A stretch of DNA of 64,000 nt, from NCBI GenBank assembly GCA_002269645.1, contig NIVC01002532.1:11195-75194 (forward strand), given 5' to 3'. Of the stretch, positions 1-26,723 are shown piece by piece (positions within the stretch are counted from its first letter, which is position 1; each line of letters begins with the position of its first letter). This stretch comes from Macrostomum lignano. Taxonomy: Eukaryota. The notes under the pieces are model-generated. The model saw only the letters and a program-made list of their open reading frames with translations, searched no databases and was not told the origin of the DNA. The translations under genes and the position numbers were made by a program.

Positions 1-2070
1 GCCGAACTTGGTCGCTCCGCCGACGTTGCAGTCGTCAGGGAAGTTGAGGAAGCTCAGCTGGTCTCCGGATCCGATGAAGTTCCACACGAGCGCCGCATCG
101 AGCGCCGCCGCGTTGAGGCTCAGCCGCAGTCGGAGCAGGTTGCGGATGTTCGCGTCCAGCGACACGACGGGCAGGCCGAGTCTCGCGGCCAGCAGGCTGT
201 AGACACCGATGTTGCAACCCGCGTCCAGGAAGGTCGCGTTCGGCACCTTCAGAGCCAGTCTCATGGTTGTATGGACCAGCTCACGCTCCCATTCGTGACT
301 GGTCTTGATGGCCTCAGAAATCATGTCTTTCCCAGGGTAGACGAACATCTTCACCTTGGTGTTATTCATGTCCAGCAGATCGGCGGTCGCGCTGCCAGAC
401 CGCACAACACCGAGGATTCTCTCATCGAACGGGTTCTGCAGCCGGCACATGGGGAACCCGCCCGCCGCTTTCTCGTACGCCTTGGCGCCGCTGCACAGGA
501 CGTGGCGGAGCGCCGGCTGCTGGAAGTCCACATTGCGCAGCTCATTGTAGATTTTGCAGTTTGTTTTTATTGTTGCCGGTGTTACACTTTAGACTATCCG
601 GGGTTTTTTTGTCTGGCCCGGATATCCGAACGCACATACGATATCCGCCCGGATACTGCCAAGCAAAAAACCTGCTTTGTTTTGTCCTTCCCGGATATCT
701 TGAGCTGCTTTGCATTGTCCGGGCACTTTGAGATGTCTCTCCCGGACATCCTACGGCACTGACTCTGCTATCCGGCCCGGAGATCACAAGAAGGAGAAGT
801 TGTCTTGGGACATCCGGCTGTAGGTTGAAAGAGAAGGGTCAGCCTGCGGAGACAGAGGTTTGCTTTAGGACATCCGGCTACTGATATCCGGGGCCAGAAA
901 TAGCAAAATTTCGACATCACTTTTCGCAAATTAGGAAATAACTTTTTTGCTACTTTTTCAATGGCAAACATCCGCGTCATGCTTATTTAACGGTGTATGT
1001 TTCAATATCAATTTCGCGCTTCACACACTCCAAAAAGAACTAAAATCAAAGCTAATATTCTCAACCGAAAAGCAGTCTGTTACTCCATTCACCAATCTAA
1101 TTCGATAAATCAAAAACTGGCGATCCGCTGATTGAAGCGTGATGAGCCACAGCCTTCTTCCGATGCTTTGATTGAGATGCTTTCCGTTTTCATGTTTTAA
1201 GAAACCAGCCAGCTGATAAGTATTATTGTCGAGACATTTGATGATGCGGTAGACGTCTTCTGCAGATTATCTCTCTCTTTTGTACTGAAATGTTCCGGCA
1301 GTTCAACATGCTCGTCGCTAAAAACGCTTACGTAGGACTTGGACAAGAAATATATTCCAACTATCTGAAAAGAATGTGTATTATAATTTGCGCAAACATT
1401 CCTTTGCGGGCTATTAGCTCGTACACTGATATTCATGGCATGTACGCTTGTGCGGGTACATTTAACGACAGTCTATTATCGATTTATTCTTAGACTGCAT
1501 CTTATCCGCCCCTCCCAAGCACTCTGAGTCAGTCCCATTCTCGCTTAATGATGTCATTCTGCCCCACGCATTCACATGCGCCTTATCTTGTAAATACGAG
1601 CTAATTTGACCAACTTGCCACCCTAATCTTTATTCACCCCGGACAATTCATGACCTAGGATATTTCAAAGCCCGATTTTGTTGTGCCTTGGATTATCTAG
1701 GGTAGGTTATCGCAAAGCGACAATAATTTTGCTTTGCGATGGCCCCCGGATAAATTAAGACCCCGGTGAACAGAAAGCCTAACAGGGTTGCCGGTGCTCT
1801 TGTTTGCAACTCTGTTTGCAGCGGTCGCGTAGCAGCAGCCTTCGCGACCACTGTTTCGTTTTTTCTACTCGAAATCTGTCTTTCACTTTCCTTTGAAGTT
1901 TCTACGATTTGGATTGGAGTCGGTATATGGGCATCGGAAATGAAATGCTTTTTCGAAGACCGCGGTTCGATATGGTCGCGCCATCGTACCCTGGAGTACA
2001 AAATGTACGCCATGAAGAGGGCGGTGGCGCACAAGGCGAGCAGCATAATATTTTGCTTTTGCCGAGCCAT
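1..2070 (-). CDS. FkbM-family (Methyltransf_21) SAM-dependent methyltransferase, paralog A, type II membrane anchor; interrupted by 1.2-kb insertion; runs off the left edge
   Basis: ATG at 2070 (MARQKQNIMLLALCATALFMAYILY, hydrophobic anchor) reads to ~1787. The minus frame below ~586 reads TNCKIYNELRNVDFQQPALRHVLC...KMFVYPGKDMIS...WERELVHTTMRLALKVPNATFLDAGCNIGVYSLLAA, clearly homologous to the ORF at 3549-4685. The two parts join in frame. It may be functional (spliced) or a pseudogene. Confidence 0.8.
582..1786. mobile_element. Putative non-autonomous DNA-transposon insertion with 10-bp target-site duplication
   Basis: Direct repeat GTTGCCGGTG at 572-581 and 1787-1796; removing the insert plus one copy restores the ORF. 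Many CCGGATATCC/GGACATCCGG-like subterminal motifs at 596-900 and CCCGG motifs at 1637-1765; hairpin ATCGCAAAGC...GCTTTGCGAT near 1709-1740. Terminal inverted similarity is only weak. Confidence 0.6.
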
Positions 2071-2281
2071 CAGTGGGAAGTGAACTTCAGTTGTCCCAAA
2101 TCCTGCAGTCACTTTGAACTCTGGCCACGACACGACTGGCTTCGTGAGCTTCAGGCAGAAGTATTTCAGTGCGATGCATTATTATTCCAACTCTGCTCAC
2201 TCGCCAGCAAGGACTGTTGCTCTGATTCAAGCTCACCAAACCCTATTGGCTGCTGATCGAACAAAAGATTCGGTTAGAAAA

Positions 2282-2337
2282 GACTGCGCATACTAGACTG
2301 CGCAGACTGCGCATACAAGACTGCGCAGACTGCGCAT
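2282..2337. promoter_or_regulatory. Cluster of ACTGCGCA motifs in the intergenic region of the divergent methyltransferase pair
   Basis: Five ACTGCGCA copies within ~55 bp, plus TGCGCATGC at ~2540, resembling NRF1-type half sites; regulatory function is inferred only. Confidence 0.25.
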
Positions 2338-3548
2338 TAAGGAGAGCTTACGAAAAACCTTTTACTACCCCCAGTGCAGTGTGCGATTTTTCTTAGTATA
2401 GAAAGATTGGCGATCACGCTACGCTCGTGTAGACGGCCGCTGCCAGGCATAAGCGCTGAGCTCAGGCACAAAACAGTGTGGGATAGGAATTTCCCTTGCT
2501 CCTAAGTCCGGCGCTAAGTCATAAATGATATTTGCGAGCTGCGCATGCAGTATTGGAAAACGGCAGAGTCGTGCCAATCTACGCATTTTCCTAAGCTCAT
2601 TGCATGTCGCGCAGTGCTCCAGAGGCTCCAGAGGTACACTGTAGAGAGGTTCAGAGTCAGAAGAGAAGCATACGGCAAAGCATTAGTGAAGCATTGGTGC
2701 CAGGGCAGCTGGTTACGCGCAATTGTTTAATCGTTGCAGCAGTCCGTACTGAGACGGTGCAAGCCAAACGGCAGTGACTGCAGCATAACTGAGCGGGAGA
2801 GTTGAACGTTTCATTCCGCACAAGACCAGCTACCACTGCGAGATCGCCTCGTATTACTGCCGTATTGAGAATTACGAGTCGAAGTAAGAGATAAAAGGCA
2901 AATTGGGTACACAGAGATTCACGACTTGTTACACCGTCTCGAGCCTAGTGCATTTACATTGCAACTCACAAACTGAGAGACATCTTGCCGCGCCAAAACA
3001 AAATCTCATTCAAGTGCAATAAGCTACAACCTCACGGCGGGCAGGCCCTCACGCTATGAGTACAGTACTTACATTAAACTTATAGAATCAGTCAATAGAA
3101 ACGCATAAGATCGTTAGCTCATCAAGAGTGACGCAATCCAGTGGAGCCACAGTATTGTCAATCGTTCCTCTGCCCCCCTCCAAATTGAATTGGGAGGAGA
3201 TGGGGAAAGCTAAGGCGAGAAAAATTCCTATTAAATGACTTCAGCAAAAGTGGACTGAAGCCGGAATAATGAAGTTCCGGGAATAAAATGCTCAAACGCC
3301 GCCAGTAGTTCCAGAAATGATTTTCTATTTTGACGCAAAGTCTTGATGTCCAATCTAAAACTCTTTGGTCATAAAGTCAGCAATTTCTGTACGCAAGCAC
3401 CTAAACCAATACTACAATGTGTTGTACCAGCTGCAAAGCTTTACCTGGCTTTAATTGATTTGGAATGCCAGAATGGCAAGATAAAGAGCAGAGGCGCAGC
3501 CATTAAACTCCGCGTCAAGTCAGCCAAGTCTGGGATCTGACATCCGGC

Positions 3549-4685
3549 ATGGCTCTCTCAAGGCAGAAAATTCTGGCTCTCCTACTTACTGCCTGCTGCG
3601 TCGCCTTCTGGGCGCTATTGGAAGAGAGGCAGCCAGCAAAAAGGACTCAGAAGAGCTCGAAATTCAACAGCATCAGCTGCAGGTTGGACTCTACGCTTTG
3701 CGACGCTCTGGTGGAGAGCAGCAGCGGAGCAGCTCAGCATGTAAGGTGCCACAGCCACCTGGAGCTGCGCGAATTTGACTTTCGTCACCCTAAGTTCAGG
3801 AGCATCCTCTGCAAAGATAAAAAAGCATTTGTGAGAGCTGGAGGGAGCTACCCGCTGTGTCGGCTGCAACACCCGTTCAATATTCAGTTGCTGGACGTTG
3901 TCAGGAGAGGAAGTCTGGTCGCGAAACTCCTTGATTTGAGGAATGAGTTTATCCAAATGTTTGTGTATCCTGAGAACGACGCAATTTCTATGCAGATCAT
4001 GACAAGCAAGAAGTGGGAGCCAGAAATTGTGCATACAACCATGAGACTGGCTCTGAAGGTGCCGAACGCGACCTTCCTGGACGCGGGTTGCAACATCGGT
4101 GTCTACAGCCTGCTGGCCGCGAGACTCGGCCTGCCCGTCGTGTCGCTGGACGCGAACATCCGCAACCTGCTCCGACTGCGGCTGAGCCTCAACGCGGCGG
4201 CGCTCGATGCGGCGCTCGTGTGGAACTTCATCGGATCCGGAGACCAGCTGAGCTTCCTCAACTTCCCTGACGACTGCAACGTCGGCGGAGCGACCAAGTT
4301 CGGCAGAGCCGTGATCGACTCGATCCCCGTGATGCCGGTAAGGAGCGAGCGGCTGTGCGGCCTCATCGGCACGAGGAACGTCGTCATCAAGCTGGACATC
4401 GAGGGCGGAGAGGCGGACTTCCTGAGGACGTCGGGCTGTCTGTTCAGCCAGTTCAGAGTGGCTGCAGTGCAGATGGAGTTTCTGAGGCAGCACATGGTCG
4501 GAACTGACAGAGCAACGATAGTGGACTTCTTCGCCAGCAGAAACTACTCCGCCTGGCGGACTCCGGGCTTGTCAGCGCTGGATGTCAAAAATGCCGAACT
4601 ATGGGAGGACTGCGATATATTGTGGATTCATAAGGACTTTGACCACCTTATTTACAGCGAAGGATTTACACTTTCCACTGGCTGA
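3549..4685 (+). CDS. FkbM-family (Methyltransf_21) methyltransferase, paralog B, intronless, N-terminal signal anchor (378 aa)
   Basis: Motif I FLDAGCNIGVYSL, VVSLDAN, and IKLDIEGGE typical of FkbM-like methyltransferases; hydrophobic N-terminus ILALLLTACCVAFWALL. Confidence 0.9.
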   Translation: MALSRQKILALLLTACCVAFWALLEERQPAKRTQKSSKFNSISCRLDSTLCDALVESSSGAAQHVRCHSHLELREFDFRHPKFRSILCKDKKAFVRAGGSYPLCRLQHPFNIQLLDVVRRGSLVAKLLDLRNEFIQMFVYPENDAISMQIMTSKKWEPEIVHTTMRLALKVPNATFLDAGCNIGVYSLLAARLGLPVVSLDANIRNLLRLRLSLNAAALDAALVWNFIGSGDQLSFLNFPDDCNVGGATKFGRAVIDSIPVMPVRSERLCGLIGTRNVVIKLDIEGGEADFLRTSGCLFSQFRVAAVQMEFLRQHMVGTDRATIVDFFASRNYSAWRTPGLSALDVKNAELWEDCDILWIHKDFDHLIYSEGFTLSTG

Positions 4686-5214
4686 TGCACCTTTGCTTTG
4701 TATTTCAAATTGAACATTTAACCTACAAGATTTGTCAGGCTTTCAAGGTAGCTCGTTACTGCTCCCATTGAGATCAATCTGATGAGATCAATAAATGGCA
4801 GCAGGAATACAAAAAAACGAACATGAAAAACTAACCCCCTTTAAATCCATGCCAAGTATGACATTCAAGATCACACCGCCAATAAAGAGACGCCACCTAA
4901 CTTTTCAATGACCACTTAGAAGCTGGACGAGACACAAAGTCTTACATTTTGAGACTGAACTTGCATCTCAAAGCTTTGACTCATTGCTAGTATTAATTAC
5001 ATATCAATTGCTCATCCTGGATGTAACTCGCCCGCTCTGCGTCTGTATTGGCTCATTTTTCCTGCAATTTCCGGATTCCGTCTGCCCTGCTCGCCCTACG
5101 TACCCAAGCGAGCGATGCCGCCTTGAGACGGAAATTTTTTTATTGATTTTTCTCCCTAATTACTACGAGTGTCTACAATCATACGACTAAACGGCGTTGC
5201 CCTCTCTTTTTTTA

Positions 5215-5566
5215 TTAGAGGCAGGGGGTTGTGTGCACCCTGGCGCACTTTAAGCGACATAGGCACACAACCGGCGAGAGGCATTACTGCCCATTCCGCC
5301 GACTCCCCTGAGCAGGCACACAAGCGCGCGGATACGTACGCAGGCACACACTCACACAGGAGTGTACAGCGGCCCTAACTTTATTTTATCGTTAGGCATG
5401 TACACTTCACTGCGCCTTGGGGGGTTGGCTCTCAAGGCCGTTAATTGCACGAGCAGAGCCAAGCCGAGATTCCAATTCAGCCCCAAATTAATGTGACTGC
5501 ACTTGGAATCGAGCCTGGGTCGCTGGCACACCAGAGCAGCTGCGCTACCGCTGGGCTACGGCCCCC
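5215..5566 (-). mobile_element. tRNA-derived SINE, copy 1
   Basis: Minus strand begins GGGGCCGTAGCCCAGCGGTAGCG...CCAGGCTCGATTCC (A-box TAGCCCAGCGG, B-box GGCTCGATTCC); collinear similarity over ~300 bp to 32380-32681. Confidence 0.85.
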
Positions 5567-6429
5567 CTGCGTTGCCCTCTCTGGTAAGGTACATAATAAA
5601 GTACATTTACTACTCTTTTAAATAATAAGCGTTTTTGATTCGCATAAGAAATTCGAGAATTTATTCAAATTTAATTCTAATTGAGAATGGCTAAACTGGC
5701 TTCAGGTCAGGCCTGGCAATTGCTATATTTGTATGCTTTCTGATTGTGAAATAAAATATAAAGAAAGCCACTAAGCATTCCCATGGATATTTATTACTAA
5801 ATACTACACAAGCAACGCTACAGCTAAACAAAGCAGAGCGCTAGGGTGACAGGGAAAAATCTCGATGCCAATGAAACAGTCGAATTTCACTGGTGCATGC
5901 GACTCTAATTAGGTAACTACTGACATCTAAGAGCAAAATAGCTGTAAACAATCCTATATACTAAAAATGAAATGTCTGTAACTAACTAGCTATGCGATAG
6001 ATTTCAGAAAAAATGGCTCAACCGATTTTCTTCAAACTTGCACCATTCGATCAGAAATTTTCCTGGGACGGTACATGCATCCTGGCTAAGAAATTGCTCA
6101 ATTTTAAAGGGATTAAATATTCGAAAAACATGCTTTTTTGCAAAGGTCAAGCAGCTCTTTCGACCTGGAATGCATTGTAAGAATGCTAGAGAAAAAACTG
6201 ACTGGCTCAATTCCGATTGTGATAAAGATTGCATCACAACAATTTGAAAACAGTGTCGATGAAATGCACACCCGACTTGATTAAAATTGCGTAACTATAT
6301 TGCTAACTTAAATTGAGACTGATACTGGCTGACTGAGAAATTGATTATGTCATAACTTTCTACTCCAATTGACTTGCTGTAAGAATTGAATTATAAGGGC
6401 CACAATTCATGTTCTCCAAATGAAAAGAG

Positions 6430-6495
6430 ATAGCCCAGATGCGAACAGACTGGGATGCTAATGTAGTGACCTGGGTTCGAATCTTAGTAGTGCAA
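6430..6495 (+). mobile_element. Degenerate tRNA/SINE head fragment
   Basis: TAGCCCAG (A-box-like) followed by GACCTGGGTTCGAATC (B-box); no full cloverleaf. Confidence 0.35.
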
Positions 6496-6534
6496 AAATA
6501 TTTTTTTATTAAAACATTAAAAACACAAAACTGC

Positions 6535-8790
6535 TAAACATAAAAGAACCACAATGTCAAACATAGAAGAGCCACCATGTTGAACATTAAAGAGCCACCA
6601 TGTCGAAAATTAAAGAGCCACCATGTCAAGCATAAAAGAGCCACCATGTTGAACATTAAAGAGCCAACATGTCAAACATTAAAGAGCCACCATGTAAAGC
6701 ATATATGTGACTCCATGTCAAACATATACGTGACTCCATGTCAAACAAAAAAGAGCCACGATGTAAAACATATACTTATGACTCTTTGTCGAACATAAAG
6801 AGCCACCATGTAAAGCATATACGTGACTCCATGTCAAACACATACGTGACTCCATGTCAAACATTAAAGAGCCACCAAGAAAAAAATTAAAAGCCACTAT
6901 GTCAAACATTAAAGAGCCACCATGTCAAACATTAAAGAGCCACCATATCGAACACTAAAGAGCCACCATGTCAAACATATAAGTGACTCCATGTCAAATA
7001 TATACGTGACTCCATGTCACACATAAAAGAGCCACCATGTAAAACATATACATATGACTCCATAACAAACATTAAACAGCCACCATGTCGAACATTAAAG
7101 AGCCACCATGTCAAACATAAAAGAGCCACCATGTCAAACACTAAAAAGCCACCATGTCAAACAATAAAGAGCCACCATGTCAAACATATACGTGACTACA
7201 TGTCAAACATATACGTGACTCCATGTCAAACATAAAAGAGCCACCATGTAAAACATATACTTATGACTCTTTGTCGAACATAAAGAGCCACCATGTAAAG
7301 CATTTACGTGACTCCAGGCCAAATATATACATGACTCCATGCCAAACACATACATGACTCCATGTCAAACATTAAAGAGCCACCATGTCACACATTAAAG
7401 AGCCAACATGTCAAACATTAAAGAGCCACCATGTAAAGCATATATGTGACTCCATGCCAAATATATACATGACTCCATGTCTAACACATACGTGACTCCA
7501 TGTCAAACATTAAAGAGCCACCATGTCGAACGTTAAAGAGCCACCATGTCGAACATTAAAGAGCCACAATGTAGAACATTAAAGAGCCACAATGTAGAAC
7601 ATTAAAGAGCCACCATGTCGAACGTTAAAGAGCCACCATGTCGAACATTAAAGAGCCACAATGTAGAACATTAAAGAGCCACCATGTCGAACATTAAAGA
7701 GTCACAATATTTAGAACATTAAAGAGCCACAATGTCAAACATTAAAGAGCCACCATGTCAAACATTAAAGAGCCACCATGTCAAACATTAAAGAGCCACC
7801 ATGTCAAACATATATGTGACTCCATGTCAAATATATACGTGACTCCATGTCACACATAAAAGAGCCACCATGTAAAACATATACATATGACTCAATAACA
7901 AACATTAAACAGCCACCATGTCGAACATTAAAGAGCCATCATGTCAAACATTAAAGAGCCACTATGTCAAACATTAAAGAGCCACTATGTCAAACATTAA
8001 AGAGCCACCATGTAAAGCATATATGTGACTCCATGCCAAATATATACATGACTCCATGTCTAACACATACGTGACTCCATGTCAAACATTAAAGAGCCAC
8101 CCTGTCGAACGTTAAAGAGCCACCATATCGAACATTAAAGAGCCACAATTTAGAACAATAAAGAGCCACCATGTCGAACATTAAAGAGCCACCATGTCTA
8201 ACATTAAAGAGCCACCATGTCGATTATTAAAGAGCCATCATGTCAAACAATAAAGAGCCACCATGTTGAACATTAAAGAGCCACCATGTCAAATATTAAA
8301 GAGCCACAATGTAGAACATTAAAGAACCACCATGTAGAACATTAAAAAGCCACCATGTCAAACATTAAGGAGCAAAAATGTAGAAAATTAAAGAGCCACA
8401 ATGTAGAACATTAAACAGCCACAATGTCGAGCATTAAAGAGCCACCATGTCGAACATTAAAAAGCCACCATGTCAAACATTAGAGAGCCACCATGTTGAA
8501 CATTAAAGAGCCACCATGTCAAACATTAAAGAGCCACCCTGTCGAACATTAAAGAGCCACCATGTCGAACATTAAAGAGCCACCATGTCGAACATTAAAG
8601 TACTGCCATGTCGAACGTTAAAGAGCCACCATGTCGAACATTAACGAGCCACGATGTCAAACATAAATGAGCTACCAAGTTAGACATAGAAGAGCCACCA
8701 TGTGAAACATATATGTGACTCCATGTCAAACATTAAAGAGCCACCGCTTCTAACATTACTGAGCCACCATGACAAACATAAAACTGGCAC
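6535..8790. repeat. 23-bp minisatellite with two interspersed unit types
   Basis: Units ATGTCAAACATTAAAGAGCCACC and ATGTCAAACATATACGTGACTCC, roughly 95-100 copies. Confidence 0.95.
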
Positions 8791-8899
8791 GATGTCATAA
8801 CACAGGAGAGACATTTTCAAACGTAATAAGAAGCGTCATGCCAATCATAAAGCAGCCACTAGAAAGCTAAGGAAATGTTGCACTATATACTTTTTGTCT

Positions 8900-9090
8900 G
8901 GTGGATGCTTGCTATTTAAGGATAGATACTTGCTATCAATTGGATGCTTGCTATCTGGGGGTTCTTTCTATCTGGGGTGCTTGCTATATGAGGGATGCTT
9001 GCTATCTGGGGGTGCTTGCTATCTGGGGGTGCTTGCTATCTGAGGGTACTTGCTATCTGGGGGGGGGGGGAGGGGGATGCTTGCTGTCTT
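8900..9090. repeat. ~19-bp degenerate tandem repeat
   Basis: GATGCTTGCTATCTGGGGG-like units. Confidence 0.8.
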
Positions 9091-9567
9091 GGGATGTTTT
9101 ATTTTTGCATTGTGCTTCATTTGAGCAGTTTTTCTGTTGTCTTTGTGAAGACTCTATTTGGCTGTCTTTTTGTTACTTGTAGAGAACAGAAGTTCTATCC
9201 AGATGTCCCCCATCGGGGGGCGAAGATTGCTAGTTCTTACTAAACTGGTTCTGACAGATCAAAATCGATTCATTTTATGGGCATAGCAAGTAAAATAGTT
9301 TGTTGGTTGGACAAAAACAAAATACCAACTAAAATGGTGCAGCTTTTGGGACTACGTGGCAAATCTGAGAGCTCCGTGACAGGTTTGATAAAAATTCTAC
9401 ATGGGGCTGCTCAGAGCAGGTGCTACTGAAATCAAAGGTATGTTCGCACATCCGGTGTTCTCTAAGATGAAGTTCATATTGAAAAAATTAATACTACAGC
9501 AGAGAGCAGCTCAGAGTCTGCATTCTCTTGGAGTCTCAATAATCCCAAAGTCTCATGGCCAGCGAGC

Positions 9568-12500
9568 TCACAGCTTCAGGTTGCGCAGGTCGCAGGCTGC
9601 CTCGAACATTGTGGCCATGCTCCAGGCCTGGGCTTGGCAGCTGTGTGGGCAGGGCTGCAGTTCATTGGGGGGGGGGGGGTTGGAGTTGGTCATTGCACGA
9701 GATCGCCTACTAACAAGTAGTTAATAAAGCATCTTGAAGCGAATATCTTATAGCGAGTACAAAAAGGTCAAGACCAGCTTGGACGGTGAACTATGAAGGA
9801 ATGAAAAACATTCGCAGGAGGGTTGTGAAAACCTTGGGCGACATCGTTGAGACAATTCAACAGACTCACACACGCGCGTATACGGGGTGTACAGGGTGAC
9901 TTTCTAGACTGCCTGTGCCTCATCGGGTGTGAATCGCATGACGGCCGATCTCCCAGCCGACTTTTGTGCACAAGCTTCAAGTAAATGTGGCTGCGCACAA
10001 AATAGAACCAACTCTGCCCCCCTACACACACTCTGCCCCCTACACATGCTCTGCCCGCCTAAACACACTCTGCCCCCTACACATGCTCTGCCCCCACTAC
10101 ACACACTCTGCCCCCTTACACATGCTCTGCCCCCTTACACATGCTCTGCCCCTTACACACGCTCTGCCCCCCTACACACACTCTGCCCCTTACACATGCT
10201 CTGCCCCCTTACACATGCTCTGCCCCTTACACATGCTCTGCCCCCCTACACATGCTCTGCCCCCTTACACATGCTCTGCCCCTTACACATGCTCTGCCCC
10301 CCTACACACACTCTGCCCCTTACACATGCTCTGCCCCCTTACACATGCTCTGCCCCTTACACATGCTCTGCCCCCTTACACATGGTCTGCCCCCTTACAC
10401 ATGGTCTGCCCCCTTACACATGCTCTGCCCCCCTACACACACTCTGCCCCTTACACATGCTCTGCCCCCCTACACACACTCTGCCCCTTACACATGCTCT
10501 GCCCCCTTACACATACACATGCTCTGCTCTCTGGATTCTTTACTTGCTACTCTCCAGTAGGCGGTTTTTCATACTGTTGTAGCTGCAGCGGTACTTTTGA
10601 GCAGTGATTAGATGGAAGCTACAACTAATCAATATGAGCAGAAACAGCTGCTGAAGCCTCACCTCTCCATCCCGGTTGGTGAGCTCGGGCAGGCTGTGCC
10701 AGTCGGAGGCCTCCATGGCGGCCTGGCAGCGGGCCAGCACGGCCTGGACGTGACCGACCTGGCCGGAAGGCGGCTCCGAGAAAGCGAGCCGGGCGCGCAG
10801 GTAATAGCCCACCGGCCACAGCCACTCGGGCCCATTGTGATAGGAGAAGCCGCCGGCCACGCTGAAGTCGCCGGAGTCGTCCGAGTTGTCGTAGCGGCCG
10901 CGGTAGGCCGGGTCGGCGGGGTCGAGCGTCCGCATGCCGAGCGGGCCAAGCAGCCGGCGCTCCGTCAGCTCCAGGGCGGCGCGGGCTCGCTCGGCGCTGA
11001 ACAAGAATGGTGCCGTCACCATGGCAACTAGAAAGTTTGGCCGCAACTGCCGGCCTTCGGGGTCGTCGGCGGGATCCACGTCCGGCAGCCAGCGGTCGCG
11101 GTAGTGGCCGGACTCGGGCAGCCAGAAGCGCGGCTCGAACTGCTTGGCGAGGTCGGCGGCCCAGTCGGCCCAGGAGACGAGCCGGCCGCCGTGCTTGACG
11201 CCCTCGTACGGGTAGGCGGACCTGCGCAGGAGCGATAGGCAGAGCGGCACTCAGATAAAATGGACACGAAAACGGCACCAAGGCCAAGAAGCATCTCAGA
11301 GTCACTTGCGCCGCCCCAGAGTTGTTGCAGGTAACACAGGTAAAAAGGAAAGAAGTTACTCTAGACTACTCTCTAAAACGACGAGATGTTACGGTACATG
11401 TCGGCTGAAAGTCGTCTTTGCGATGCTTTTGCAACGAATCTTGAGGCCGTAGAGCCGTATCTGAGGCGTGCTGGAGTCGCTGTAGAATCTTTGAGCTGCG
11501 TCTAAAGCGCATCTGCATCAATTTTATATATTAGAAACGCACTTCACATCTATAAAAACTTGATTTAGGTTTTTTAATTTACGTTAACTTGCGGAGTATT
11601 AACAATAGCCAGGACAACAGATACAGGAATTAACTAGATGGGCCACTCAGCACATTTGCGTGCAATAGGTGCATTATTTTGGGCAACTCCCAACGGCAGC
11701 TCAGAGCTGCCACCTTATTGCTGCAGGGTAAGTTGAAGCTCTGATTAATGAAGCATTGGCAGAGCAAATAATCAGAGCCTAACCTGGGAAATTTGGCCAG
11801 CCGGTCCACCACGGCAGCGCACAGTCCCGTCAGCTCAACAGCGCAGCCGTGACGGGGCGTGGCGGGCACGCCGCGGTTGCCGGCCCGCTCCGAGCCGCCC
11901 ATTTTGTCCATCCAGGTGCCGCAGTTCCAGCGGTTGCCGCCAACTACGAAGGGCCAGCTGAGGCCGGCGGTGACGCGGAAGCCTTCGGGCCGCATGTGCG
12001 AGTCCAGCTGCGGCCCGGCGTTGCGCTCCACAAAGTCGATGCCGTCAGCGTGGCGCTGCAGGGCCTCCTGCATCACCTGGAGAGGCAGGTAGGAGCTTAG
12101 TTAGTTAACGCTGGCTATGACACTGCGTCAATTGACTTAGCGAGGAACCGAGGTACGCTTGCAGCTGCCTATGATGCTAGAAGATGCTCCATGTGTGCTC
12201 AGAAAGACAGACAAGAACAGTTATTAGCAGGGCATTGTACTGTGCATCGCACAATGCACCAATGCATCTTGGAAACTCCGCAGAAGAGCGTAAATTGGCT
12301 CACAACACCAGCAGCTGCGCATTGGACTCTGTTGCTAACCAAAAAACAAAGCTTGCAAATTTTGCAGGAGAAAAGCTCACCTGGTGCAGCGGCTGCACGC
12401 AGTCAAACACCGGCTGAGAATCGTCGGTTGGGAAGAGGCGCAGCACGGGATCGGCAAGGACGCTGGCACCGGACGGCGCCATGGCAACGAACTCGCAGAC

Positions 12501-15500
12501 GCAGTGCAGCCAGTACCACACGGCATCGCGGCAGTTGTACCTGGCGCCGACGCCGCCGCCGCACAGGTTGGGGATGAGGCCGTGGCGCAGGGCGCCGGCG
12601 TAGGCCAGCAGCACCGAGCGGGCGTCGTCCCAGCGGCCGGTGAGCAGCAGGAGGCCGCGCAGGGAGATGAAGGTGTCGCGGCCCCAGTTGCGGAACAGGC
12701 CGGCGGCGAAGTGCGGGAAGCCGGCCGCGATGGACAGCCGCGGCAGCTGGTCGGCCAGCGCCGGCGCCAACGGCGGCAGCGCCGAGTCGGGCGGGTCGCC
12801 GACGAACTGCAGGGAGCCGAGAGACAGACAGAACAGCAGGCGGGAGGCGGCCGGACAGGCGGGCAGCAGCACCGAGCGGGCCCGCGCCAGCAGGGCGTCG
12901 TGAATGCGTATGACAGCCGAGCCAAAGTAGGACGGGATGAGGTAGCGCGGGACCTGCCGCATCGCCTTCAGGTACTCGGACAGCCAGGCGGCCAGCTTGG
13001 GCGCGAAGCCGCACCTGTGGTGCAATGCAGGGAGCTGAGGCTAGTCCCCTGTGTTTATTCCCCTTCCCCTTCGACTATAAGACGTATTGGCTATAATGCC
13101 AATGCCTAAATACCAAGCTGCCAGGACGAACCGCTACTGGCGCAATCCAGGGTCTGTGTACACCTGCAGTACAGGCATTTACCAAGTGTAAACTGGCACT
13201 ACAGCTGCATCCTCACCTCTCAATCCGGCCCAGAACATAGTTGGGCAGCCAGTCACCCTGCCGCAGATTGCCGCACACCGGATGTCCCAGATCCTTGCGC
13301 AGGTTGACCTCCCGCATCAGCCGGCCCAGCCGGTGCAGCCCGCAGTAGACGAGGTCGCCGAAGCTCGGCACATTGTAGATGCCGCCGCCCTCCTCGGCTG
13401 CGCAGCGGAACAGCAGGTAGGACAGGTGGTGAGCGTTCAGGCCGGACACGGCGTCCTCAAGAGATACACCGGACTCGGGCGACTTGCAGCTGAGCAGAGA
13501 CTTCTTCAGGGCCAAGCAGGCCAGCTCCGAGGGCTTGTCGAGCAGAACCCGGATAGCCACCACCTGGCAGGAGTAAAGTAAACAGCTAACTTGAGCACTG
13601 CACGCATGCATTGGGCGTTGGCACTCATCAGCGAGAATTACACAAGCCACAGGCCGCTGACGAAATCGTAGCAGGGAAACCCACAGGTGCCAGTCTAGCT
13701 ACTCACAGTGGCATGGGAAATCCACAGGTGCCAGTGTAGCTACTCACAGTGGCATGGGAAATCCACAGGTGCCAGTGTAGCTACTCACAGTGGCATGGGA
13801 AATCCACAGGTGCCAGTGTAGCTACTCACAGTGGCATGGGAAATCCACAGGTGCCAGTCTAGCTACTCACAGTGGCATGGGAAATCCACAGGCGCCAGTC
13901 TAGCTACTCACAGTGGCATTGTATTACAACTCACCGCTCCTGGCGGCAGGTGTTTGAAGTGCAGGCGGCCGTCACCAAAAGCCACAAGCTGCGACTTCTC
14001 CAGCGGCAGGCGCTCCCGAGCCTCGATCGAGCAGCCCGTCAGGCCGTTGATGACGCTGGGGTCGCGGACGAATTTGGCCGGTGTCTGGCTGAAGGTGAGC
14101 TCGAAGATCACCTCACCAATGCTGCCGCTGATCGGCAGGGACGGCACGTGCGGCCGCGAGTCGGCGGTAGGCGCGGAGAAGGCGGTGTGGGCGATGAGGA
14201 TGACGCTCTGGTGGCTGGCGGGATTGTGCCGGGTGACGGCCACCACGGAGTCGGTCACCTGGTCAACAAACTGCTCTTCGAAGCCTTCGGCGGCCAGATG
14301 GGCGTGCAATTCGTTCAGCAGGCGCTTGCCCTTGGTCACGGCCGGCTCCTTCTCCACCTGGTGGGGCAAATTAGAGTTTAATTTCAGCGGCACATGCGAT
14401 TTCCTGGCATTCAAACAGCACCTACCAGTAGCACCGAGTCATTTTTTGTTCTCAACAAGTACTACTGGTAGTAATAGGATGCAACTCTTTAAACTTTACT
14501 TTTCAAGGCTTAAATTCGCTTTGGCATTTTAGTGCACTATTTAGCACTGAATTGACCATCTTGCAGGCTCAGAACATCCGCCAAGTTACCTGCTGCACAG
14601 TCTGGTACAGACGAGTCTCCTGCACCACGTGGATGTGATGCGGCACAAGCTCGTCGTAGCCGCGGTTGCTGCCCGTGGCGCAAGCGGCCATGGCCACCAG
14701 GGCTGAGGCGGGCAGCAGGTTGTGTGCAGAGCGGGCCTCCACGGGGCTCGGATTGTCGTGAGTGGCGTCGAACAGCAGGGCGCGCGACACCGCCGAGCAG
14801 ATGGGGTGGCTGCGCTCGCGCTGCAGGTCGCCTACAGGCGGGCCGCCGTATCTGCGATGGTTACCGGGCTTGTTAGAGAACTCGGTGATCCAGTGAGAGA
14901 TAAGGGACTGAGTGACGGATACTTGCAAAATACACAAGTGGAAGTCCAACAATTCATAAGACACCAGATTGATAAGGGACTGAGTGACGGATACTTGCAA
15001 AATACACAAGTGGAAGTCCAACAATTCATAAGACACCAGATTGATAAGGGACTGAGTGACGGATACTTGCAAAACACACAAGTGGAAGTCCAACAATTCA
15101 TAATACACCAGATTGATAAGGGACTGAGTGACGGATACTTGCAAAACACACAAGTGGAAGTCCAACAATTCATAAGACACCAGATTGATAAGGGACTGAG
15201 TGACGGATACTTGCAAAACACACAAGTGGAAGTCCAACAATTCATAATACACCAGATTGATAAGGGACTGAGTGACGGATACTTGCAAAACACACAAGTG
15301 GAAGTCCAACAATTCATAATACACCAGATTGATAAGGGACTGAGTGACGGATACTTGCAAAACACACAAGTGGAAGTCCAACAATTCATAAGACACCAGA
15401 TTGATAAGGGACTGAGTGACGGATACTTGCAAAATACACAAGTGGAAGTCCAACAATTCATAAGACACCAGATTGATAAGGGACTGAGTGACGGATACTT

Positions 15501-18500
15501 GCAAAACACACAAGTGGAAGTCCAACAATTCATAATACATCAGATTGATAAGGGACTGAGTGACGGATACTTGCAAAACACACAAGTGGAAGTCCAACAA
15601 TTCATAAGACACCAGATTGATAAGGGACTGAGTGACGGATACTTGCAAAACACACAAGTGGAAGTCCTACAATTCATAATACACCAGATTGATAAGGGAC
15701 TGAGTGACGGATACTTGCAAAATACACAAGTGGAAGTCCTACAATTCATAATACACCAGATTGATAAGGGACTGAGTGACGGATACTTGCAAAACACACA
15801 AGTGGAAGTCCTACAATTCATAAGACACCAGATTGATAAGGGACTGAGTGACGGATACTTGCAAAACACACAAGTGGAAGTCCAACAATTCATAATACAC
15901 CAGATTGATAAGGGACTGAGTGACGGATACTTGCAAAACACACAAGTGGAAGTCCAACAATTCATAATACACCAGATTGATAAGGGACTGAGTGACGGAT
16001 ACTTGCAAAACACACAAGTGGAAGTCCAACAATTCATAAGACACCAGATTGATAAGGGACTGAGTGACGGATACTTGCAAAATACACAAGTGGAAGTCCA
16101 ACAATTCATAAGACACCAGATTGATAAGGGACTGAGTGACGGATACTTGCAAAATACACAAGTGGAAGTCCTACAATTCATAATACACCAGATTGATAAG
16201 GGACTGAGTGACGGATACTTGCAAAATACACAAGTGGAAGTCCTACAGTTCATAATACACCAGATTGATAAGGGACTGAGTTACGGATACTTGCAAAATA
16301 CACAAGTGGAAGTCCTACAATTCATAAGACACCAGATTGATAAGGGACTGAGTGACGGATACTTGCAAAACACACAAGTGGAAGTCCAACAATTCATAAT
16401 ACACCAGATTGATAAGGGACTGAGTGACGGATACTTGCAAAACACACAAGTGGAAGTCCTACAGTTCATAATACACCAGATTGATAAGGGACTGAGTTAC
16501 GGATACTTGCAAAATACACAAGTGGAAGTCCTACAATTCATAAGACACCAGATTGATAAGGGACTGAGTTACGGATACTTGCAAAACACACAAGTGAAAG
16601 TCCTACAGTTCATAAGACATCAGAGTGATAAGGGATGGAGTGACGGATAGCTTGTAAGCCGGTGCCAACACTGCAACTCACTTGTAAACCTGCCTGCCCA
16701 GCTCAAACGGACTCCAAGCGCTTAAAGCCTCCCGAATGCACGAGCTGATGCCCAGCCGGCTGATGAAGATATTGTCCAGCCTCTCCGAGCCGGTGAACAG
16801 CTCGCCAGTAACGTAGAGGTCGGGCCGCACAGCCCGGGCCCTGTCAAGCATGTGCTGCGCCACGTGCAGCGGAGTGGAGTGGCAGTTGTCGAGGCGGACA
16901 GCATGGAACACCCGGGCGGTGCTCTCGGTGTACTCGGCCATGCGCTGCCACAGGTAGGGGCAGTCGTCGGGACCCCGGCCGTAGCGCAGCTTCACTGAGT
17001 CGCCCCAGACGATGAGCTCACGGCGCAGGAATATGTTGCAGTCGGGCTGCTCGGCAAAGTTGCGCATCGGGTCGTCGTTCATCACCCAGCCGTTGTGCGC
17101 CATGACGCGGACGGCCCGGTCAGGCGAGTCAAGGACCTGCCGCTCGCAGCTGGACAGGGGGATGTCAGGCCACTGGTGCAGGAAGTAGTTCCACACCATC
17201 GGCGTGTCCGCTGTGACCCGGCCGAGCAGCTCGCCATCCGGGTTCACGAACCTGGGGAAAGGAGCAACGCGATGGGTTCATCTTTTGCTGACGAAATGTA
17301 CCACCAGCTACAAGCTACACAGTTTGAATTCGCGCCAAAATTTAACTTCTTAGAAACTTCAAACACTGTCAGAAAGCATTAAACAATGTCCCATTTAGCG
17401 CGCTATTATTAAAAAGCGTGCCGAAGGAGTCTGATGTTGACATTTTATAGAATGTATAAAATGATTTGAAACGACCTAGTTAATAAAGCGAAAGAAATAA
17501 CGGAAGAAGCAAACGTAACAGGAGTTAAAGTAAAGTCTTTAAATTCGAGAATCGGCTCGAGCTTCTTTTTCGGTACCAAAAATGAAGCCCAAGGGCATTC
17601 TGGCTATGATTTTAATTGGACTTATCTAAGAGCAGGCTGATTACCAAATCCGAAAATACAAGAAATACCACAATCAGTCAGTCACCTGTATCTGGCGCCA
17701 GCAATAGCATTGTCCACAGCAGCTGAGATGTGAACCGCAATCTCCTTGGCTCGCTCGGCATTAAGATAGTCCAGGTGCTGGCGCAGGCTGGCAGCGGCCC
17801 GGTCCACGGAGGCGGGCAGGTGCCTGACGGGCAGGTAGTGGTACTTGGCGGCCAGGTCCATGCGCACCCTACAGCCGTGCCTGCGATAGGCCGGGTCTGG
17901 CTGCAGCAGCAGCAGCTCTGGGGCCAGCGATTCCAGCTGGCCGGTGGTGGGGCAGTGCCCGGACACCAGGTAGGCGGAGAACTCGGCCACCAGGTTGTCC
18001 ACGTGGCACAAGTAGAAATCGGAAATATTTAGTCCCTCCAAGATAGCGCGCAGTTTCTGCTTGGCCTAAAATGGGTACGACAGGCTGCCCTTGATTGGCT
18101 GACCACTTGGGTAGCTACTGAAACCCAAGCTGCTTAAACCCAAGCTACTCAAACCCAAGCTGCTCAAACCCAAGCTGCTCAAACCCAAGCTACTGAAACC
18201 CAAGCTGCTTGAACCAAAGCTGCTCAAACCCAAGCTCCTCAAACCCAAGCTACCCAAACCCAAGCTGCGCAAACCCAAGCTACTCAAACCAAAGCTACTC
18301 AAACCCAAGCTACTCAAACGAAAGCTGCTCAAACCCAAGCTACTCAAACCCAAGCTGCTCAAACCTAAGCTACTCAAACCCAAGCTACTCAAACCCAAGC
18401 TGCTCAAACGAAAGCTGCTCAAACCCAAGCTGCTCAAACCCAAGCTACTCAAACCCAAGCTGCTCAAACGAAAGCTGCTCAAATCCAAGCTACTCAAACC

Positions 18501-20794: not shown

Positions 20795-21650
20795 ATAAAG
20801 GGTCGGACAGCGGGTACATGGAAGGGCGGACAGCGGGCGCATGGGTGTGGACGGTGGGTACATGGAAGGGCGGACAGCGGGCGCATGGGTGTGGACGGTG
20901 GGTACATGGAAGGGCGGACAACGGGCGCATGGGTGTGGACGGTGGGTACATGGAAGGGCGGACAGCGGGCGCATGGGTGTGGACGGTGGGTACATGGAAG
21001 GGCGGACAGCGGGCGCATGGGTGTGGACGGTGGGTACATGGAAGGGCGGACAGCGGGCGCATGGGTGTGGACGGTGGGTACATGGAAGGGCGGACAGCGG
21101 GCGCATGGGTGTGGAAGGTGGGTACATGGAAGGGCGGACAGCGGGCGCATGGGTGTGGACGGTGGGTACATGGAAGGGCGGACAGCGGGCGCATGGGTGT
21201 GGAAGGTGGGTACATGGAAGGGCGGACAGCGGGCGCATGGGTGTGGACGGTGGGTACATGGAAGGGCGGACAGTGGGCGCATGGGTGTGGACGGTGGGTA
21301 CATGGGGGCGGAAAGTGGATACATGGGGGCGGACGGCGGGTACAGGGGGCGGAAAGTGGGTGCATGGAGGGGCGGACAATGGGTACCTAGAGGGGTGGAC
21401 AGTGGGTACATGGAGGGGCGGACAATGAGTACATAGAGGGGCAGACAGTGGGTACATGGAGGGGCGGACAGTGGGTACATGGAGGGGCGGACAGTGGGTA
21501 CATGGGGGCGGACAGTGAGTACATGGGGGCGGACAGTGGGTACATGGGTGCGGACGGGTGGGTACATGGAGGGGCGGACAGTGGGTACATGGGGGGACAG
21601 TGGGTACATGGGGGCGGACAGTGGGTACATGGGGCGGACGGGTGGGTACA
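20795..21650. repeat. 44-bp G-rich tandem repeat grading into ~21-23-bp degenerate units, upstream of the AGL ATG
   Basis: GGTACATGGAAGGGCGGACAGCGGGCGCATGGGTGTGGACGGTG. Confidence 0.95.
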
Positions 21651-25520: not shown

Positions 25521-26001
25521 GGGAGACTTGGCGGAATGCGCCACTGCATGAAAGGGTGCGCGCAGCACTGGCAGTCATTTCTGATGGTTTCTACTTGAAT
25601 TTGTTTAGCAAGGTTCGAGAGAGAGTAGTAGAGTATAGCATGCTACAATAAGAAATAGCATAATTTGATATAGCAAAGCAAAAATAATATGGCACAAAAT
25701 AGTATCTACAAACTATTATAAAAAATACTAGTGCACTAGTTGGTTGTCTAATGCACAATTAGGCATTGGCTAATTTGGCTACAATCAAGCAAGTAACTAA
25801 ATAAATTAATGCCTTCAAACTATTTTATATATAAGGGGACAATGTAAATAATGTAAAAATGATCTAGCCATTAGGGCATCAAAACTAAATAAGTTTATAA
25901 TGACAAGTAACAGAAGTATCCACATTAGCTATTAGTCTTAGTCTATGCTCATATTAGATAGGTCCATATTGATAGGACTAATATATTGTAAGCATATCAT
26001 C

Positions 26002-26041
26002 CATGCGTAACCTTGGGAATCACTTGGCCGTTTCTATTGGC

Positions 26042-26103
<62 letters not shown>

Positions 26104-26215: not shown

Positions 26216-26227
26216 AGGGAGGATTGC

Positions 26228-26622: not shown

Positions 26623-26723
26623 CCCAAGTATGATAAGCATAGGATATCCCCTAGGCCTATCCTTACCTTAACCTTAGGCTTATTAAACATTACTTAATAG
26701 CCAAGATAGACCTAGGCCTAAAA

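What the first reader, a model, noticed from the sequence alone, without database searches (positions are those of the whole stretch)
1..4304. Perfect gene-conversion tract between inverted, otherwise divergent methyltransferase paralogs
Seen: bases 1-273 are the exact reverse complement of 4032-4304, with no mismatch found on manual comparison, and this covers the SAM-binding motif. Immediately N-terminal of that point the two proteins are only ~40% identical (ELRNVDFQQPALRHVLC vs ELREFDFRHPKFRSILC). Seen: paralog B switches abruptly from AT-richer to GC-rich codons at ~4030 and back at ~4580, whereas the visible stretch of paralog A below ~550 stays GC-rich on both sides of the breakpoint. 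Inference: a recent, directional A-to-B ectopic conversion of the catalytic core made B a chimera with its own stem and substrate-side region and a homogenised active site.
Basis: partly seen in the sequence, partly recalled or inferred. Interest (0 to 1): 0.7.

Follow-up and report, generated by a model that had tools for sequence, protein, structure and literature searches.

The report
Gene-conversion mosaic in flatworm methyltransferase paralogs
Two head-to-head, anciently diverged methyltransferase genes of a Macrostomum-type flatworm share a perfectly identical catalytic-core segment kept alike by ongoing gene conversion, and one of them is also a deletion-made fusion with a third paralog; this is a clean but ordinary case of concerted evolution.

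Summary
Window 1-273 is the exact reverse complement of 4032-4304. Identity then drops sharply to 54-64% DNA and 49% protein.

The genes are FkbM-like class I SAM methyltransferases with N-terminal signal anchors, in an animal genome whose only close relatives are Macrostomum lignano sequences. A syntenic copy of the locus (L001, M. lignano contig NIVC01000543.1) carries three paralogs, A', B' and C', and resolves the mosaic:
- B shares only the core (window 4032-~4468) with A and C.
- A and C share about 825 nt, running through the stop codon and 91 nt of 3'UTR.
- At three synonymous sites in the tract, both window copies carry one base and all three L001 copies the other. So conversion continued after the two loci split.

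- The predicted distal breakpoint at 4570-4600 does not exist.
- Window B is B-type up to 4466. From 4469 it is A/C-type, and its 3' flank is C-specific.
- Window B is therefore an in-frame B::C fusion, missing 1,934 bp relative to L001.
- The A-to-B direction fits the GC3 pattern but is not proven.
- Window A is interrupted by a 1,205-bp insertion.

This is a known kind of process, of modest interest.

The parts
1..273 (-). Paralog A, visible part of the shared catalytic-core tract (left arm of the inverted repeat). It is cut by the window edge.
   Evidence: 273/273 match to the reverse complement of 4032-4304. It encodes HTTMRLALKVPNATFLDAGCNIGVY...GGATKFG.
274..352 (-). Paralog A segment that is C-type: the 5' extension of the A/C tract.
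   Evidence: 97.4% identical to L001 C', against 91.0% to its own counterpart A' and 64% to B. BLAST of window 1-352 against L001 6045-6395 gives 98.9%.
353..581 (-). Paralog A-specific coding sequence (N-terminal subdomain, NCKIYNELRNVDF...).
   Evidence: 96.6% to L001 A' and 54% to B. Translation.
582..1786 (.). 1,205-bp insertion interrupting the paralog A reading frame. It is flanked by a 10-bp direct duplication (GTTGCCGGTG on the + strand, at 572-581 and 1787-1796).
   Evidence: Absent from L001, where A' is one uninterrupted 432-codon ORF. Single copy, with no terminal inverted or direct repeats. No Rfam family or tRNA match.
1787..2070 (-). Paralog A 5' coding part: start ATG at 2070-2068, signal anchor and stem (MARQKQNIMLLALCATALFMAYILY...RAPAT).
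   Evidence: ORF. 89.7% amino-acid identity to A' residues 1-117.
2134..3548 (.). Spacer between the head-to-head genes A and B; presumed divergent promoter region.
   Evidence: Collinear with L001 8735-10009 in the same relative orientation, so there is no inversion between the two loci. The promoter role is an inference.
3549..4031 (+). B-specific N-terminal coding part (signal anchor, stem, N-terminal subdomain; codons 1-161).
   Evidence: 98.7-98.9% to L001 B' and 48-65% to A/C. GC3 0.56-0.62.
4032..4304 (+). Right arm of the perfect inverted repeat; first part of the shared core tract (SAM-binding motif I LDAGCNIG, SLDAN).
   Evidence: Locus-specific shared variants at 4079, 4130 and 4175.
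4305..4468 (+). Remainder of the core tract shared by B with A/C. It carries B-private markers at 4314 and 4462-4466.
   Evidence: 98.8% to L001 B' and 97.0% to A'/C'. The partner in window A lies left of the window and is not visible.
4469..4685 (+). C-terminal coding part of A/C type (stop codon 4683-4685); the C-derived half of the B::C fusion.
   Evidence: 97.2% to L001 A' and C', 56.8% to L001 B'.
4686..4776 (+). 3'UTR segment shared by the A and C lineages (end of the A/C tract).
   Evidence: 97.8% to both A' and C'. A' and C' are 100% identical here.
4777..5205 (+). C-specific 3' flank. It shows that the 3' end of window B descends from paralog C, not from A.
   Evidence: 94.4% to the L001 C' flank against 43% to the A' flank. 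BLAST of L001 5150-6394 against window 5205-3955.

Best explanation
The window holds part of a small cluster of ancient paralogs. They encode FkbM-like, class I SAM-dependent methyltransferases with N-terminal signal anchors, in a Macrostomum lignano-type flatworm genome.

The ancestral cluster had three genes. A lay head-to-head with B, and C followed B in the same orientation. Their N-terminal halves, and B's C-terminus, diverged until synonymous sites were saturated.

The segment encoding the Rossmann core is kept nearly identical among all three genes by repeated non-allelic (ectopic) gene conversion. Conversion here means double-strand-break repair that copies a patch from a paralog without crossover. 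A and C share a longer tract of about 825 nt, running through the stop codon into the 3'UTR.

The left boundary of the A/B tract is the same in two diverged copies of the locus, so the mosaic predates their split. Locus-specific shared substitutions inside the tract show that conversion continued afterwards. The 273-nt perfect match in the window is the most recent homogenisation.

In the window's lineage, a crossover between the directly repeated core tracts of B and C also deleted 1,934 bp. That left an intact in-frame B::C fusion gene (window 3549-4685). In the same lineage a 1,205-bp insertion interrupted A.

What is shown:
- the mosaic map
- the shared variants
- the missing segment
- the fold class

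What is inferred:
- the repair mechanism
- the direction of transfer
- whether the genes are expressed
- the biochemical substrate (possibly methylation in the secretory pathway)
For: - Perfect 273-nt inverted match with a sharp edge.
- Paralog divergence just outside the tract: pS = 42.2/61.2 = 0.69 and pN = 0.35. Inside the tract there are no differences. Selection on the protein cannot explain identical synonymous sites.
- The syntenic locus L001 has A' (10010-11308, +), B' (7628-8734, -) and C' (5664-6722, -). Its A'/C' inverted repeat is 825 nt at 99%, and B'/C' form a direct repeat spaced 1,934 nt apart.
- Segment identities, for 4032-4304: paralogs within a locus are 99.3-100% identical, while counterparts between loci are 98.5-98.9%. 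Sites 4079, 4130 and 4175 split window copies from L001 copies, and no site there groups A with A' or B with B'.
- Outside the tract, counterparts are 96.6-98.9% identical and paralogs 48-65%.
- Fusion: window B is B-type up to 4466 and A/C-type from 4469, with a C-specific flank at 4777-5205. L001 6390-7810 has no match anywhere in the 64-kb window, which holds only two family copies.
- GC3 rises to 0.85-0.87 in the tract of all copies. Singleton paralogs are uniform: P0003 at 0.85/0.84/0.79 and P0002 at 0.58/0.58/0.59.
- Family and fold: all 7 relatives hit PF05050 (best E 9e-8). The AlphaFold2 model's best PDB matches are all class I SAM methyltransferases.
- M. lignano has three homeologous subgenomes with about 2% SNP divergence and many long indels (PMC10733133). 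This matches the window/L001 relationship.
Against: - The part of window A that would pair with 4305-4776 lies left of the window and could not be retrieved. The full length of the repeat in this copy is therefore unknown.
- Only two copies of the locus were available, so the concerted-evolution signal rests on three sites.
- The B/C switch (4467-4468) sits at the very end of the shared tract rather than clearly inside it. This fits a crossover only if the CTGCA/TTTTT difference at 4462-4466 arose later in the L001 A'/C' lineage.
- No read-level data were available. 36% of the Mlig_3_7 assembly length is reported to lie in scaffolds chimeric between subgenomes, so an assembly contribution to the 1,934-bp difference cannot be excluded.
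- Direction of conversion and gene expression were not tested.
Confidence: 0.8

Rival explanations
1. Assembly or polishing artefact. The perfect identity, and/or the missing 1,934 bp, come from repeat collapse, a misjoin between paralogs or subgenomes, or consensus polishing with mis-mapped reads.
For: The window starts inside the repeat. The M. lignano reference is known to contain many chimeric scaffolds. The window's own contig could not be found for an independent check.
Against: An independent contig (L001) shows the same inverted A/B mosaic with the same left breakpoint. Cross-mapping during polishing would blur differences between loci as well, yet three sites are fixed differently in the two loci. 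The fusion junction is seamless and in frame, and the flanks stay collinear. The shared tract of about 440 nt is short compared with long reads.
Confidence: 0.07
2. A single old chimeric-gene event (segment duplication or shuffling) created the shared core. Strong purifying selection, not continuing conversion, has kept it identical.
For: The left breakpoint is identical in both loci, so the mosaic is older than their split. The tract shows 0 nonsynonymous against 4 synonymous differences between counterparts, so it is strongly constrained.
Against: Synonymous sites are identical between the paralogs in the window. The three changes that did occur between the loci (all synonymous third positions) are each present in every copy of one locus. 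Without exchange this would need parallel mutations. The tract boundaries do not match the intron positions of the intron-containing paralog in L004, which lie near residues ~130-137 and ~217-222, against boundaries at 161/162 and ~307.
Confidence: 0.06
3. The elevated GC of the tract comes from GC-biased gene conversion in a recombination hot spot, not from an A-type donor. Direction then cannot be read from composition at all.
For: GC3 is about 0.87 in the tract of all three paralogs, above the adjacent flanks of B (0.56), C (0.67) and the part of A just before the tract (about 0.70). Singleton paralogs show no core-specific GC3 peak.
Against: A's non-shared upstream region already reaches GC3 0.83-0.97, so donor composition alone is sufficient. 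The three recent locus-specific changes show no GC bias: G/C, C/G and A/G. This is a refinement of the best explanation rather than an alternative to conversion.
Confidence: 0.25
4. The inverted identical segments are the substrate of a programmed inversion or cassette-swap system that shuffles N-terminal modules onto C-terminal modules.
For: The genes are head-to-head with the repeat in their 3' halves. A crossover between the arms would therefore swap C-termini between genes without breaking the frame (geometry).
Against: The spacer has the same orientation in both loci. No recombinase gene lies in the cluster region: in window 1-9000 and L001 4500-12000 the only long ORFs with recognisable content are the methyltransferases themselves, and the family-searched ORFs further along the window are ordinary cellular genes. 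The one rearrangement seen is a deletion, as expected from accidental non-allelic recombination.
Confidence: 0.03

Closest known systems
Concerted evolution by ectopic gene conversion between inverted paralogs (for example the arms of human Y-chromosome palindromes, or RHD/RHCE hybrid alleles); cited from general knowledge
   Same: Oppositely oriented copies on one chromosome. Patches of identity with sharp edges. Copies within a locus are more alike than counterparts in a diverged locus. Hybrid genes arise as products.
   Different: The tract here is short (about 0.44-0.83 kb) and sits inside genes that are otherwise saturated with divergence, rather than in long, near-identical duplicated arms. 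Three paralogs take part, with nested tract lengths. The comparison is between subgenome copies of a neopolyploid flatworm.
Fusion genes made by unequal crossover between tandem paralogs (haemoglobin Lepore delta-beta fusion, red/green opsin hybrids, CYP21A1P/CYP21A2 chimeras); cited from general knowledge
   Same: Direct repeats, loss of exactly one repeat spacing (1,934 bp), and an in-frame hybrid with the 5' part of one gene and the 3' part and flank of the next.
   Different: The parent genes share only a ~440-nt converted tract, not full-length similarity, so the conversion tract itself supplied the homology for the crossover. The population status (fixed or polymorphic) is unknown.
FkbM-family SAM-dependent methyltransferases (Pfam PF05050, Methyltransf_21)
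   Same: A motif I-like xLDxGxNIG, the DIEGGE segment, and a predicted class I Rossmann methyltransferase fold. All seven relatives hit PF05050.
   Different: These are animal proteins with an N-terminal signal anchor and a cysteine-containing stem or N-terminal subdomain. The window protein scores below Pfam's gathering threshold (20.4 against 22.7 bits). Substrate and activity are unknown.

Membership tests
Interlocus (ectopic) gene conversion / concerted evolution | A tract of (near) identity with sharp boundaries, flanked by much higher divergence in both copies | tested here: met
   273/273 identical, then 54-64%. In L001 both boundaries of the B' tract are visible.
Interlocus (ectopic) gene conversion / concerted evolution | Identity extends to synonymous sites, so protein-level selection cannot explain it | tested here: met
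   0 synonymous differences in 91 codons, against pS 0.69 in the adjacent 96 codons.
Interlocus (ectopic) gene conversion / concerted evolution | Paralogs within a locus are closer than counterparts between diverged loci, with shared derived variants per locus | tested here: met
   Sites 4079, 4130 and 4175 split window copies from L001 copies. Within-locus identity is 99.3-100%, between-locus 98.5-98.9%. Only two loci were available.
Interlocus (ectopic) gene conversion / concerted evolution | Donor and acceptor (direction) identified | tested here: inconclusive
   GC3 fits an A-type origin of the core and a C-type origin of the C-terminal/3'UTR part. GC-biased conversion is an alternative, and there is no outgroup.
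Interlocus (ectopic) gene conversion / concerted evolution | Both copies and their identity confirmed at read level | not testable with these tools
   No reads were available, and the window's own contig was not retrievable.
Unequal-crossover (NAHR) deletion fusion gene | The ancestral arrangement has directly repeated homologous segments, and the derived copy lacks exactly one spacing | tested here: met
   The L001 direct repeat B'/C' is spaced 1,934 nt apart. The unique sequence between them (L001 6390-7810) is absent from the window.
Unequal-crossover (NAHR) deletion fusion gene | The hybrid has the 5' part and flank of one parent and the 3' part and flank of the other, in frame | tested here: met
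   B-type at 3549-4466, A/C-type at 4469-4776, C-specific flank at 4777-5205. The ORF is an intact 378 aa.
Unequal-crossover (NAHR) deletion fusion gene | The junction lies inside the shared homologous tract | tested here: inconclusive
   The marker switch at 4467-4468 is at the extreme 3' end of the tract. It lies inside the tract only if the L001 A'/C' TTTTT variant at 4462-4466 is derived.
FkbM-family methyltransferase (PF05050) | Significant match to the family profile above the curated threshold | tested here: inconclusive
   Window B: E 6e-4, 20.4 bits, below the 22.7 cut-off. All 7 aligned relatives match, best E 9e-8. P0003 carries a precomputed PF05050 hit.
FkbM-family methyltransferase (PF05050) | Class I Rossmann-like SAM-methyltransferase fold with a glycine-rich motif I | tested here: met
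   AlphaFold2 model with core pLDDT of 80-93. All top 50 Foldseek PDB matches are SAM methyltransferases, prob 0.99-1.00, although TM is only about 0.3-0.55. Motif LDAGCNIG at residues 177-184. Weak motif-I match to 7wzg.
FkbM-family methyltransferase (PF05050) | SAM-dependent methyl transfer to a defined substrate | not testable with these tools
   Needs biochemistry.
Programmed DNA inversion / cassette-switch system | Both orientations of the segment between the inverted repeats occur, and a dedicated recombinase is present | tested here: not met
   The spacer has the same orientation in the window and L001. No recombinase-like ORF in window 1-9000 or L001 4500-12000. The ORFs further along the window that were family-searched are ordinary cellular genes.

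The most novel reading that the evidence does not exclude
The cluster may be a modular diversification system. Conversion would keep one constrained catalytic cassette identical across paralogs, while the N-terminal (and B's C-terminal) modules evolve at a near-neutral or faster rate. Crossovers in the shared cassette would then make new module combinations such as the intact B::C fusion. Between the two loci the N-terminal modules show dN/dS of about 0.9 to above 1, against 0 nonsynonymous changes in the core. If these enzymes methylate secreted or surface glycans, this would be a route to rapid change of surface chemistry in a neopolyploid animal.
Probability: 0.1. Interest if true: 0.5.

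Novelty: new member of a known kind. Interest (0 to 1): 0.27.

Why it matters
The locus is a compact, well-resolved example of both outcomes of non-allelic homologous recombination. One outcome is patchwise conversion that homogenises a catalytic core. The other is a crossover that fuses two genes. Both can be dated against the subgenome split of a recently polyploid flatworm.

For annotators of Macrostomum genomes it is a practical warning: these paralogs will attract multi-mapping reads, and gene trees will depend on which segment is used. It does not reveal a new mechanism.

Tried and rejected
1. All three routes failed.
   - The exact protein of window B is not on record.
   - A search with the neighbouring F5/8-type-C gene of L001 returned only the L001 protein itself.
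   - A search with a glycogen-debranching-enzyme exon of the window returned no Macrostomum protein; the best hit was 50% identical.
   The window's own contig and a third subgenome copy therefore stayed out of reach.

3. A PDB sequence-profile search gave only a marginal motif-I hit.

4. Classifying the 1,205-bp insertion as a transposon did not succeed. It has no other copy in the window or L001, no terminal inverted or direct repeats, and no Rfam or tRNA match.

5. A literature search linking FkbM enzymes to animal Golgi glycan methylation found nothing relevant. The substrate idea remains my own inference.

6. Rejected: 'selection alone', because synonymous sites are identical.

7. Rejected: 'exon boundary', because the tract edges do not match the intron positions in the L004 paralog.

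8. Rejected: B::A hybrid by inversion, because the 3' flank of window B is C-specific, not A-specific.


Full report
**Observation**

Window 1-273 is the exact reverse complement of 4032-4304. The match is 273/273, with the first mismatch at position 274. The repeat finder reports the same pair, extended to 348 nt at 93%. Beyond the edge, 30-nt blocks fall to 50-73% identity. The left arm is cut by the window start, so 273 nt is a minimum.

The adjacent 96 codons are 49% identical at protein level. In those codons pS is 0.69 (42.2 of 61.2 synonymous sites differ) and pN is 0.35. So these are ancient paralogs carrying one young-looking patch.

**What the genes are**

Gene B is an intact 378-codon ORF at 3549-4685 on the + strand. 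Gene A is on the - strand and only partly visible. Its 5' coding part lies at 2070-1787 and its continuation at 581-1.

B gives a sub-threshold hit to Pfam PF05050, the FkbM methyltransferase domain (20.4 bits against a 22.7 cut-off). All seven aligned relatives hit the same family, best E 9e-8.

An AlphaFold2 model has mean pLDDT 68.8, with the core at 80-93. It shows an N-terminal helix at residues 5-26, a disordered stem and an alternating beta/alpha core. All of its top 50 PDB matches are class I SAM-dependent methyltransferases, with TM-scores of only 0.24-0.57.

The shared tract covers residues 162-~307. It includes motif I (LDAGCNIG), SLDAN and DIEGGE, which make up most of the Rossmann core. 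A secretory-pathway location and a glycan substrate are my inference from the signal-anchor architecture. A literature search did not add support.

**Source**

The only close relatives are Macrostomum lignano proteins. The rest of the window carries ordinary animal genes interspersed with many minisatellites: glycogen debranching enzyme, a NIF-type phosphatase, Argonaute, isocitrate dehydrogenase and a KIF9-like kinesin.

**A second copy of the locus resolves the mosaic**

Protein P0001 led to locus L001, on M. lignano contig NIVC01000543.1. L001 is collinear with window 1-12,000 at about 95-97% identity, with large indels. M. lignano is a neopolyploid with three subgenomes differing by about 2% in SNPs plus many long indels (PMC10733133). 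L001 is therefore most simply a homeologous copy, although an allelic or other-strain copy is not excluded.

L001 has three paralogs:
- A' at 10010-11308 (+)
- B' at 7628-8734 (-)
- C' at 5664-6722 (-)

Multiple alignment and segment identities give this map, in window-B coordinates:
- **Up to 3953:** all three genes are mutually about 48-55% identical.
- **3954-4031:** A-type and C-type converge, while B stays distinct (64%).
- **4032-~4468:** all copies are 96-100% identical.
- **4469-4776** (C-terminus, stop codon and 91 nt of 3'UTR): A' and C' are 100% identical, while B' has its own sequence (57% coding, 36% UTR).
- **Beyond 4776:** each gene has its own flank.

In L001 the A'/C' inverted repeat is 825 nt at 99%.

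**Evidence that conversion is ongoing**

Five sites vary among the five sequences within 4032-4304. Two are singletons. At the other three (4079, 4130, 4175; all synonymous third positions) both window copies carry one base and all three L001 copies the other. No site groups A with A' or B with B'.

Within-locus identity (99.3-100%) exceeds between-locus identity (98.5-98.9%) only inside the tract. Outside it, counterparts are 96.6-98.9% identical and paralogs about 50%. This is the signature of concerted evolution after the two loci split.

The left A/B boundary is at the same nucleotide in both loci, so the mosaic itself is older than the split.

B-private markers at 4314 and 4462-4466 survive in both loci. 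Recent conversion patches have therefore been shorter than the whole tract.

Window A at 274-352 is closer to C' (97.4%) than to its own counterpart A' (91.0%). This points to a separate A/C exchange.

**Window B is a B::C fusion**

Window B follows B' up to 4466. From 4469 it follows the A/C type, and from 4777 to 5205 it carries the C'-specific flank (94% identical, against 43% to the A' flank).

The B' C-terminus, the B'-C' intergenic DNA and the C' N-terminal half (L001 6390-7810) have no match anywhere in the window. The window contains only two family copies.

B' and C' are direct repeats spaced 1,934 nt apart. The divergent parts of B' and C' are saturated (pS 0.72), so the three-gene state is ancestral. 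The window state is best explained by an unequal crossover in the shared tract that deleted 1,934 bp and left an in-frame hybrid.

A B::A hybrid made by inversion is excluded by the C-specific flank. The spacer has the same orientation in both loci.

**Composition and direction**

GC3 by segment (before the tract / tract / after the tract):

| Copy | Before | Tract | After |
|---|---|---|---|
| Window B | 0.56 | 0.87 | 0.66 |
| B' | 0.55 | 0.85 | 0.59 |
| C' | 0.67 | 0.87 | 0.66 |
| A' | 0.83 | 0.87 | 0.66 |
| P0003 (singleton) | 0.85 | 0.84 | 0.79 |
| P0002 (singleton) | 0.58 | 0.58 | 0.59 |

The step at 4032 is real and is specific to the mosaic genes.

The decline after about 4450 is gradual. 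It also occurs in A' and C', which are identical to each other there, so it is not a conversion boundary.

The pattern fits a core that originated in an A-type gene and a C-terminal/3'UTR part that originated in a C-type gene. GC-biased conversion is an alternative, and no outgroup was available. Direction is therefore unproven.

**Selection**

Between the loci, the tract has 4 synonymous and 0 nonsynonymous differences. B's N-terminal 161 codons have 0 synonymous and 5 nonsynonymous (Fisher p = 0.008). A's non-tract parts have dN/dS of about 0.8-1.2. The numbers are small. They indicate a strongly constrained core joined to weakly constrained, or diversifying, N-terminal modules.

**State of gene A in the window**

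Relative to A', which is an uninterrupted ORF, window A carries a 1,205-bp insertion at 582-1786. It is flanked by a 10-bp duplication. Read straight through, the frame stops 33 codons into the insertion.

The insert is single-copy, lacks terminal repeats and matches no RNA family. Frame-preserving GT...AG pairs exist, but there is no expression evidence.

**Rivals**

- **Assembly or polishing artefact.** This is unlikely for the mosaic, because an independent contig shows the same breakpoint and the shared variants are locus-specific. It cannot be excluded for the 1,934-bp difference without reads, since 36% of the reference assembly length lies in chimeric scaffolds.
- **Selection alone.** Excluded by the synonymous identity.
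- **A single ancient chimera without continuing exchange.** Contradicted by the three locus-specific sites.
- **An exon-boundary explanation.** It fails because the tract edges do not match the intron positions of the L004 paralog.
- **A programmed inversion system.** It has no support.

**Comparison and verdict**

The locus behaves like classic interlocus gene conversion between inverted paralogs, combined with a Lepore-type unequal-crossover fusion between tandem paralogs. It meets the tested defining features of both. The unresolved points are the direction of conversion and the exact position of the crossover.

It is a new instance of known processes in a neopolyploid flatworm. It is useful as an annotation caveat and as a tidy datable example, but it is not surprising to a specialist.

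Three details are not supported: the predicted distal breakpoint, the 'own substrate-side region' of B, and the two-gene one-way scenario.

**Dead ends**

Attempts to fetch the sequence left of the window, or a third copy of the locus, failed.

Noticed in passing
window 582-1786 (duplicated 10-mers at 572-581 and 1787-1796): A 1,205-bp single-copy insertion interrupts gene A relative to the uninterrupted A' in L001. It has no terminal repeats and no RNA-family match. It contains four copies of a ~23-nt motif ending in CCCGGATATC (604-785). A GT...AG pair at 1783/586 would splice it out in frame, so it could be a young intron-like element rather than a simple disruption.
   Followed up: partly
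window 6536-8802: A 23-nt minisatellite of about 98 copies (consensus AAACATTAAAGAGCCACCATGTC). It lies within a ~3.3-kb stretch (5950-9233) that has no collinear counterpart in L001. Arrays with shifted self-matches in steps of 23 nt also lie upstream of the unrelated paralog gene in L002/L003 (about 7700-9850). Whether they are the same repeat family was not checked.
   Followed up: no
window 10012-10514 versus L001 2024-3480: A 19-nt repeat array (CTCTGCCCCCTTACACATG) lies near the 3' end of the glycogen-debranching-enzyme gene. It is about 0.5 kb long in the window and about 1.45 kb in L001.
   Followed up: no
window ~9,500-20,000 (- strand): A multi-exon glycogen-debranching-enzyme gene. 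Its non-coding stretches hold large minisatellites: 72 nt x 24 at 14899-16654, 15 nt x 76 at 18113-19252, and 44 nt x 19 at 20805-21650. The protein search with one of its exons returned no Macrostomum protein, even though L001 carries a called 1,474-residue homolog.
   Followed up: partly
window 23012-24618 (-), 33047-33859 (+), 50557-51171 (-), 53136-56276 (-): Exon-sized ORFs with clear Pfam domains: NIF-type phosphatase, Argonaute N/L1/PAZ, isocitrate/isopropylmalate dehydrogenase, and KIF9-like kinesin motor. This is an ordinary animal gene neighbourhood.
   Followed up: partly
window 26000-32000 and 60000-62000: AT-rich blocks (GC 0.32-0.37) in a window that otherwise averages about 0.5 GC. 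No ORF of 200 codons or more lies there. Their nature is unknown.
   Followed up: no
L001 10575-10660 (A') versus window 274-352 and L001 C': In the 78 nt just upstream of the core tract, A' differs from window A at 7 positions, while window A matches C'. Some A' states resemble the B type (for example CTGAGA). This hints at very short additional conversion patches.
   Followed up: no
L002 and L003 (contigs NIVC01000049.1 and NIVC01003749.1): The distant paralog P0003 is encoded identically on two contigs that are 97.9-99.6% identical over unique sequence. This is another example of retained subgenome copies in the same assembly.
   Followed up: partly
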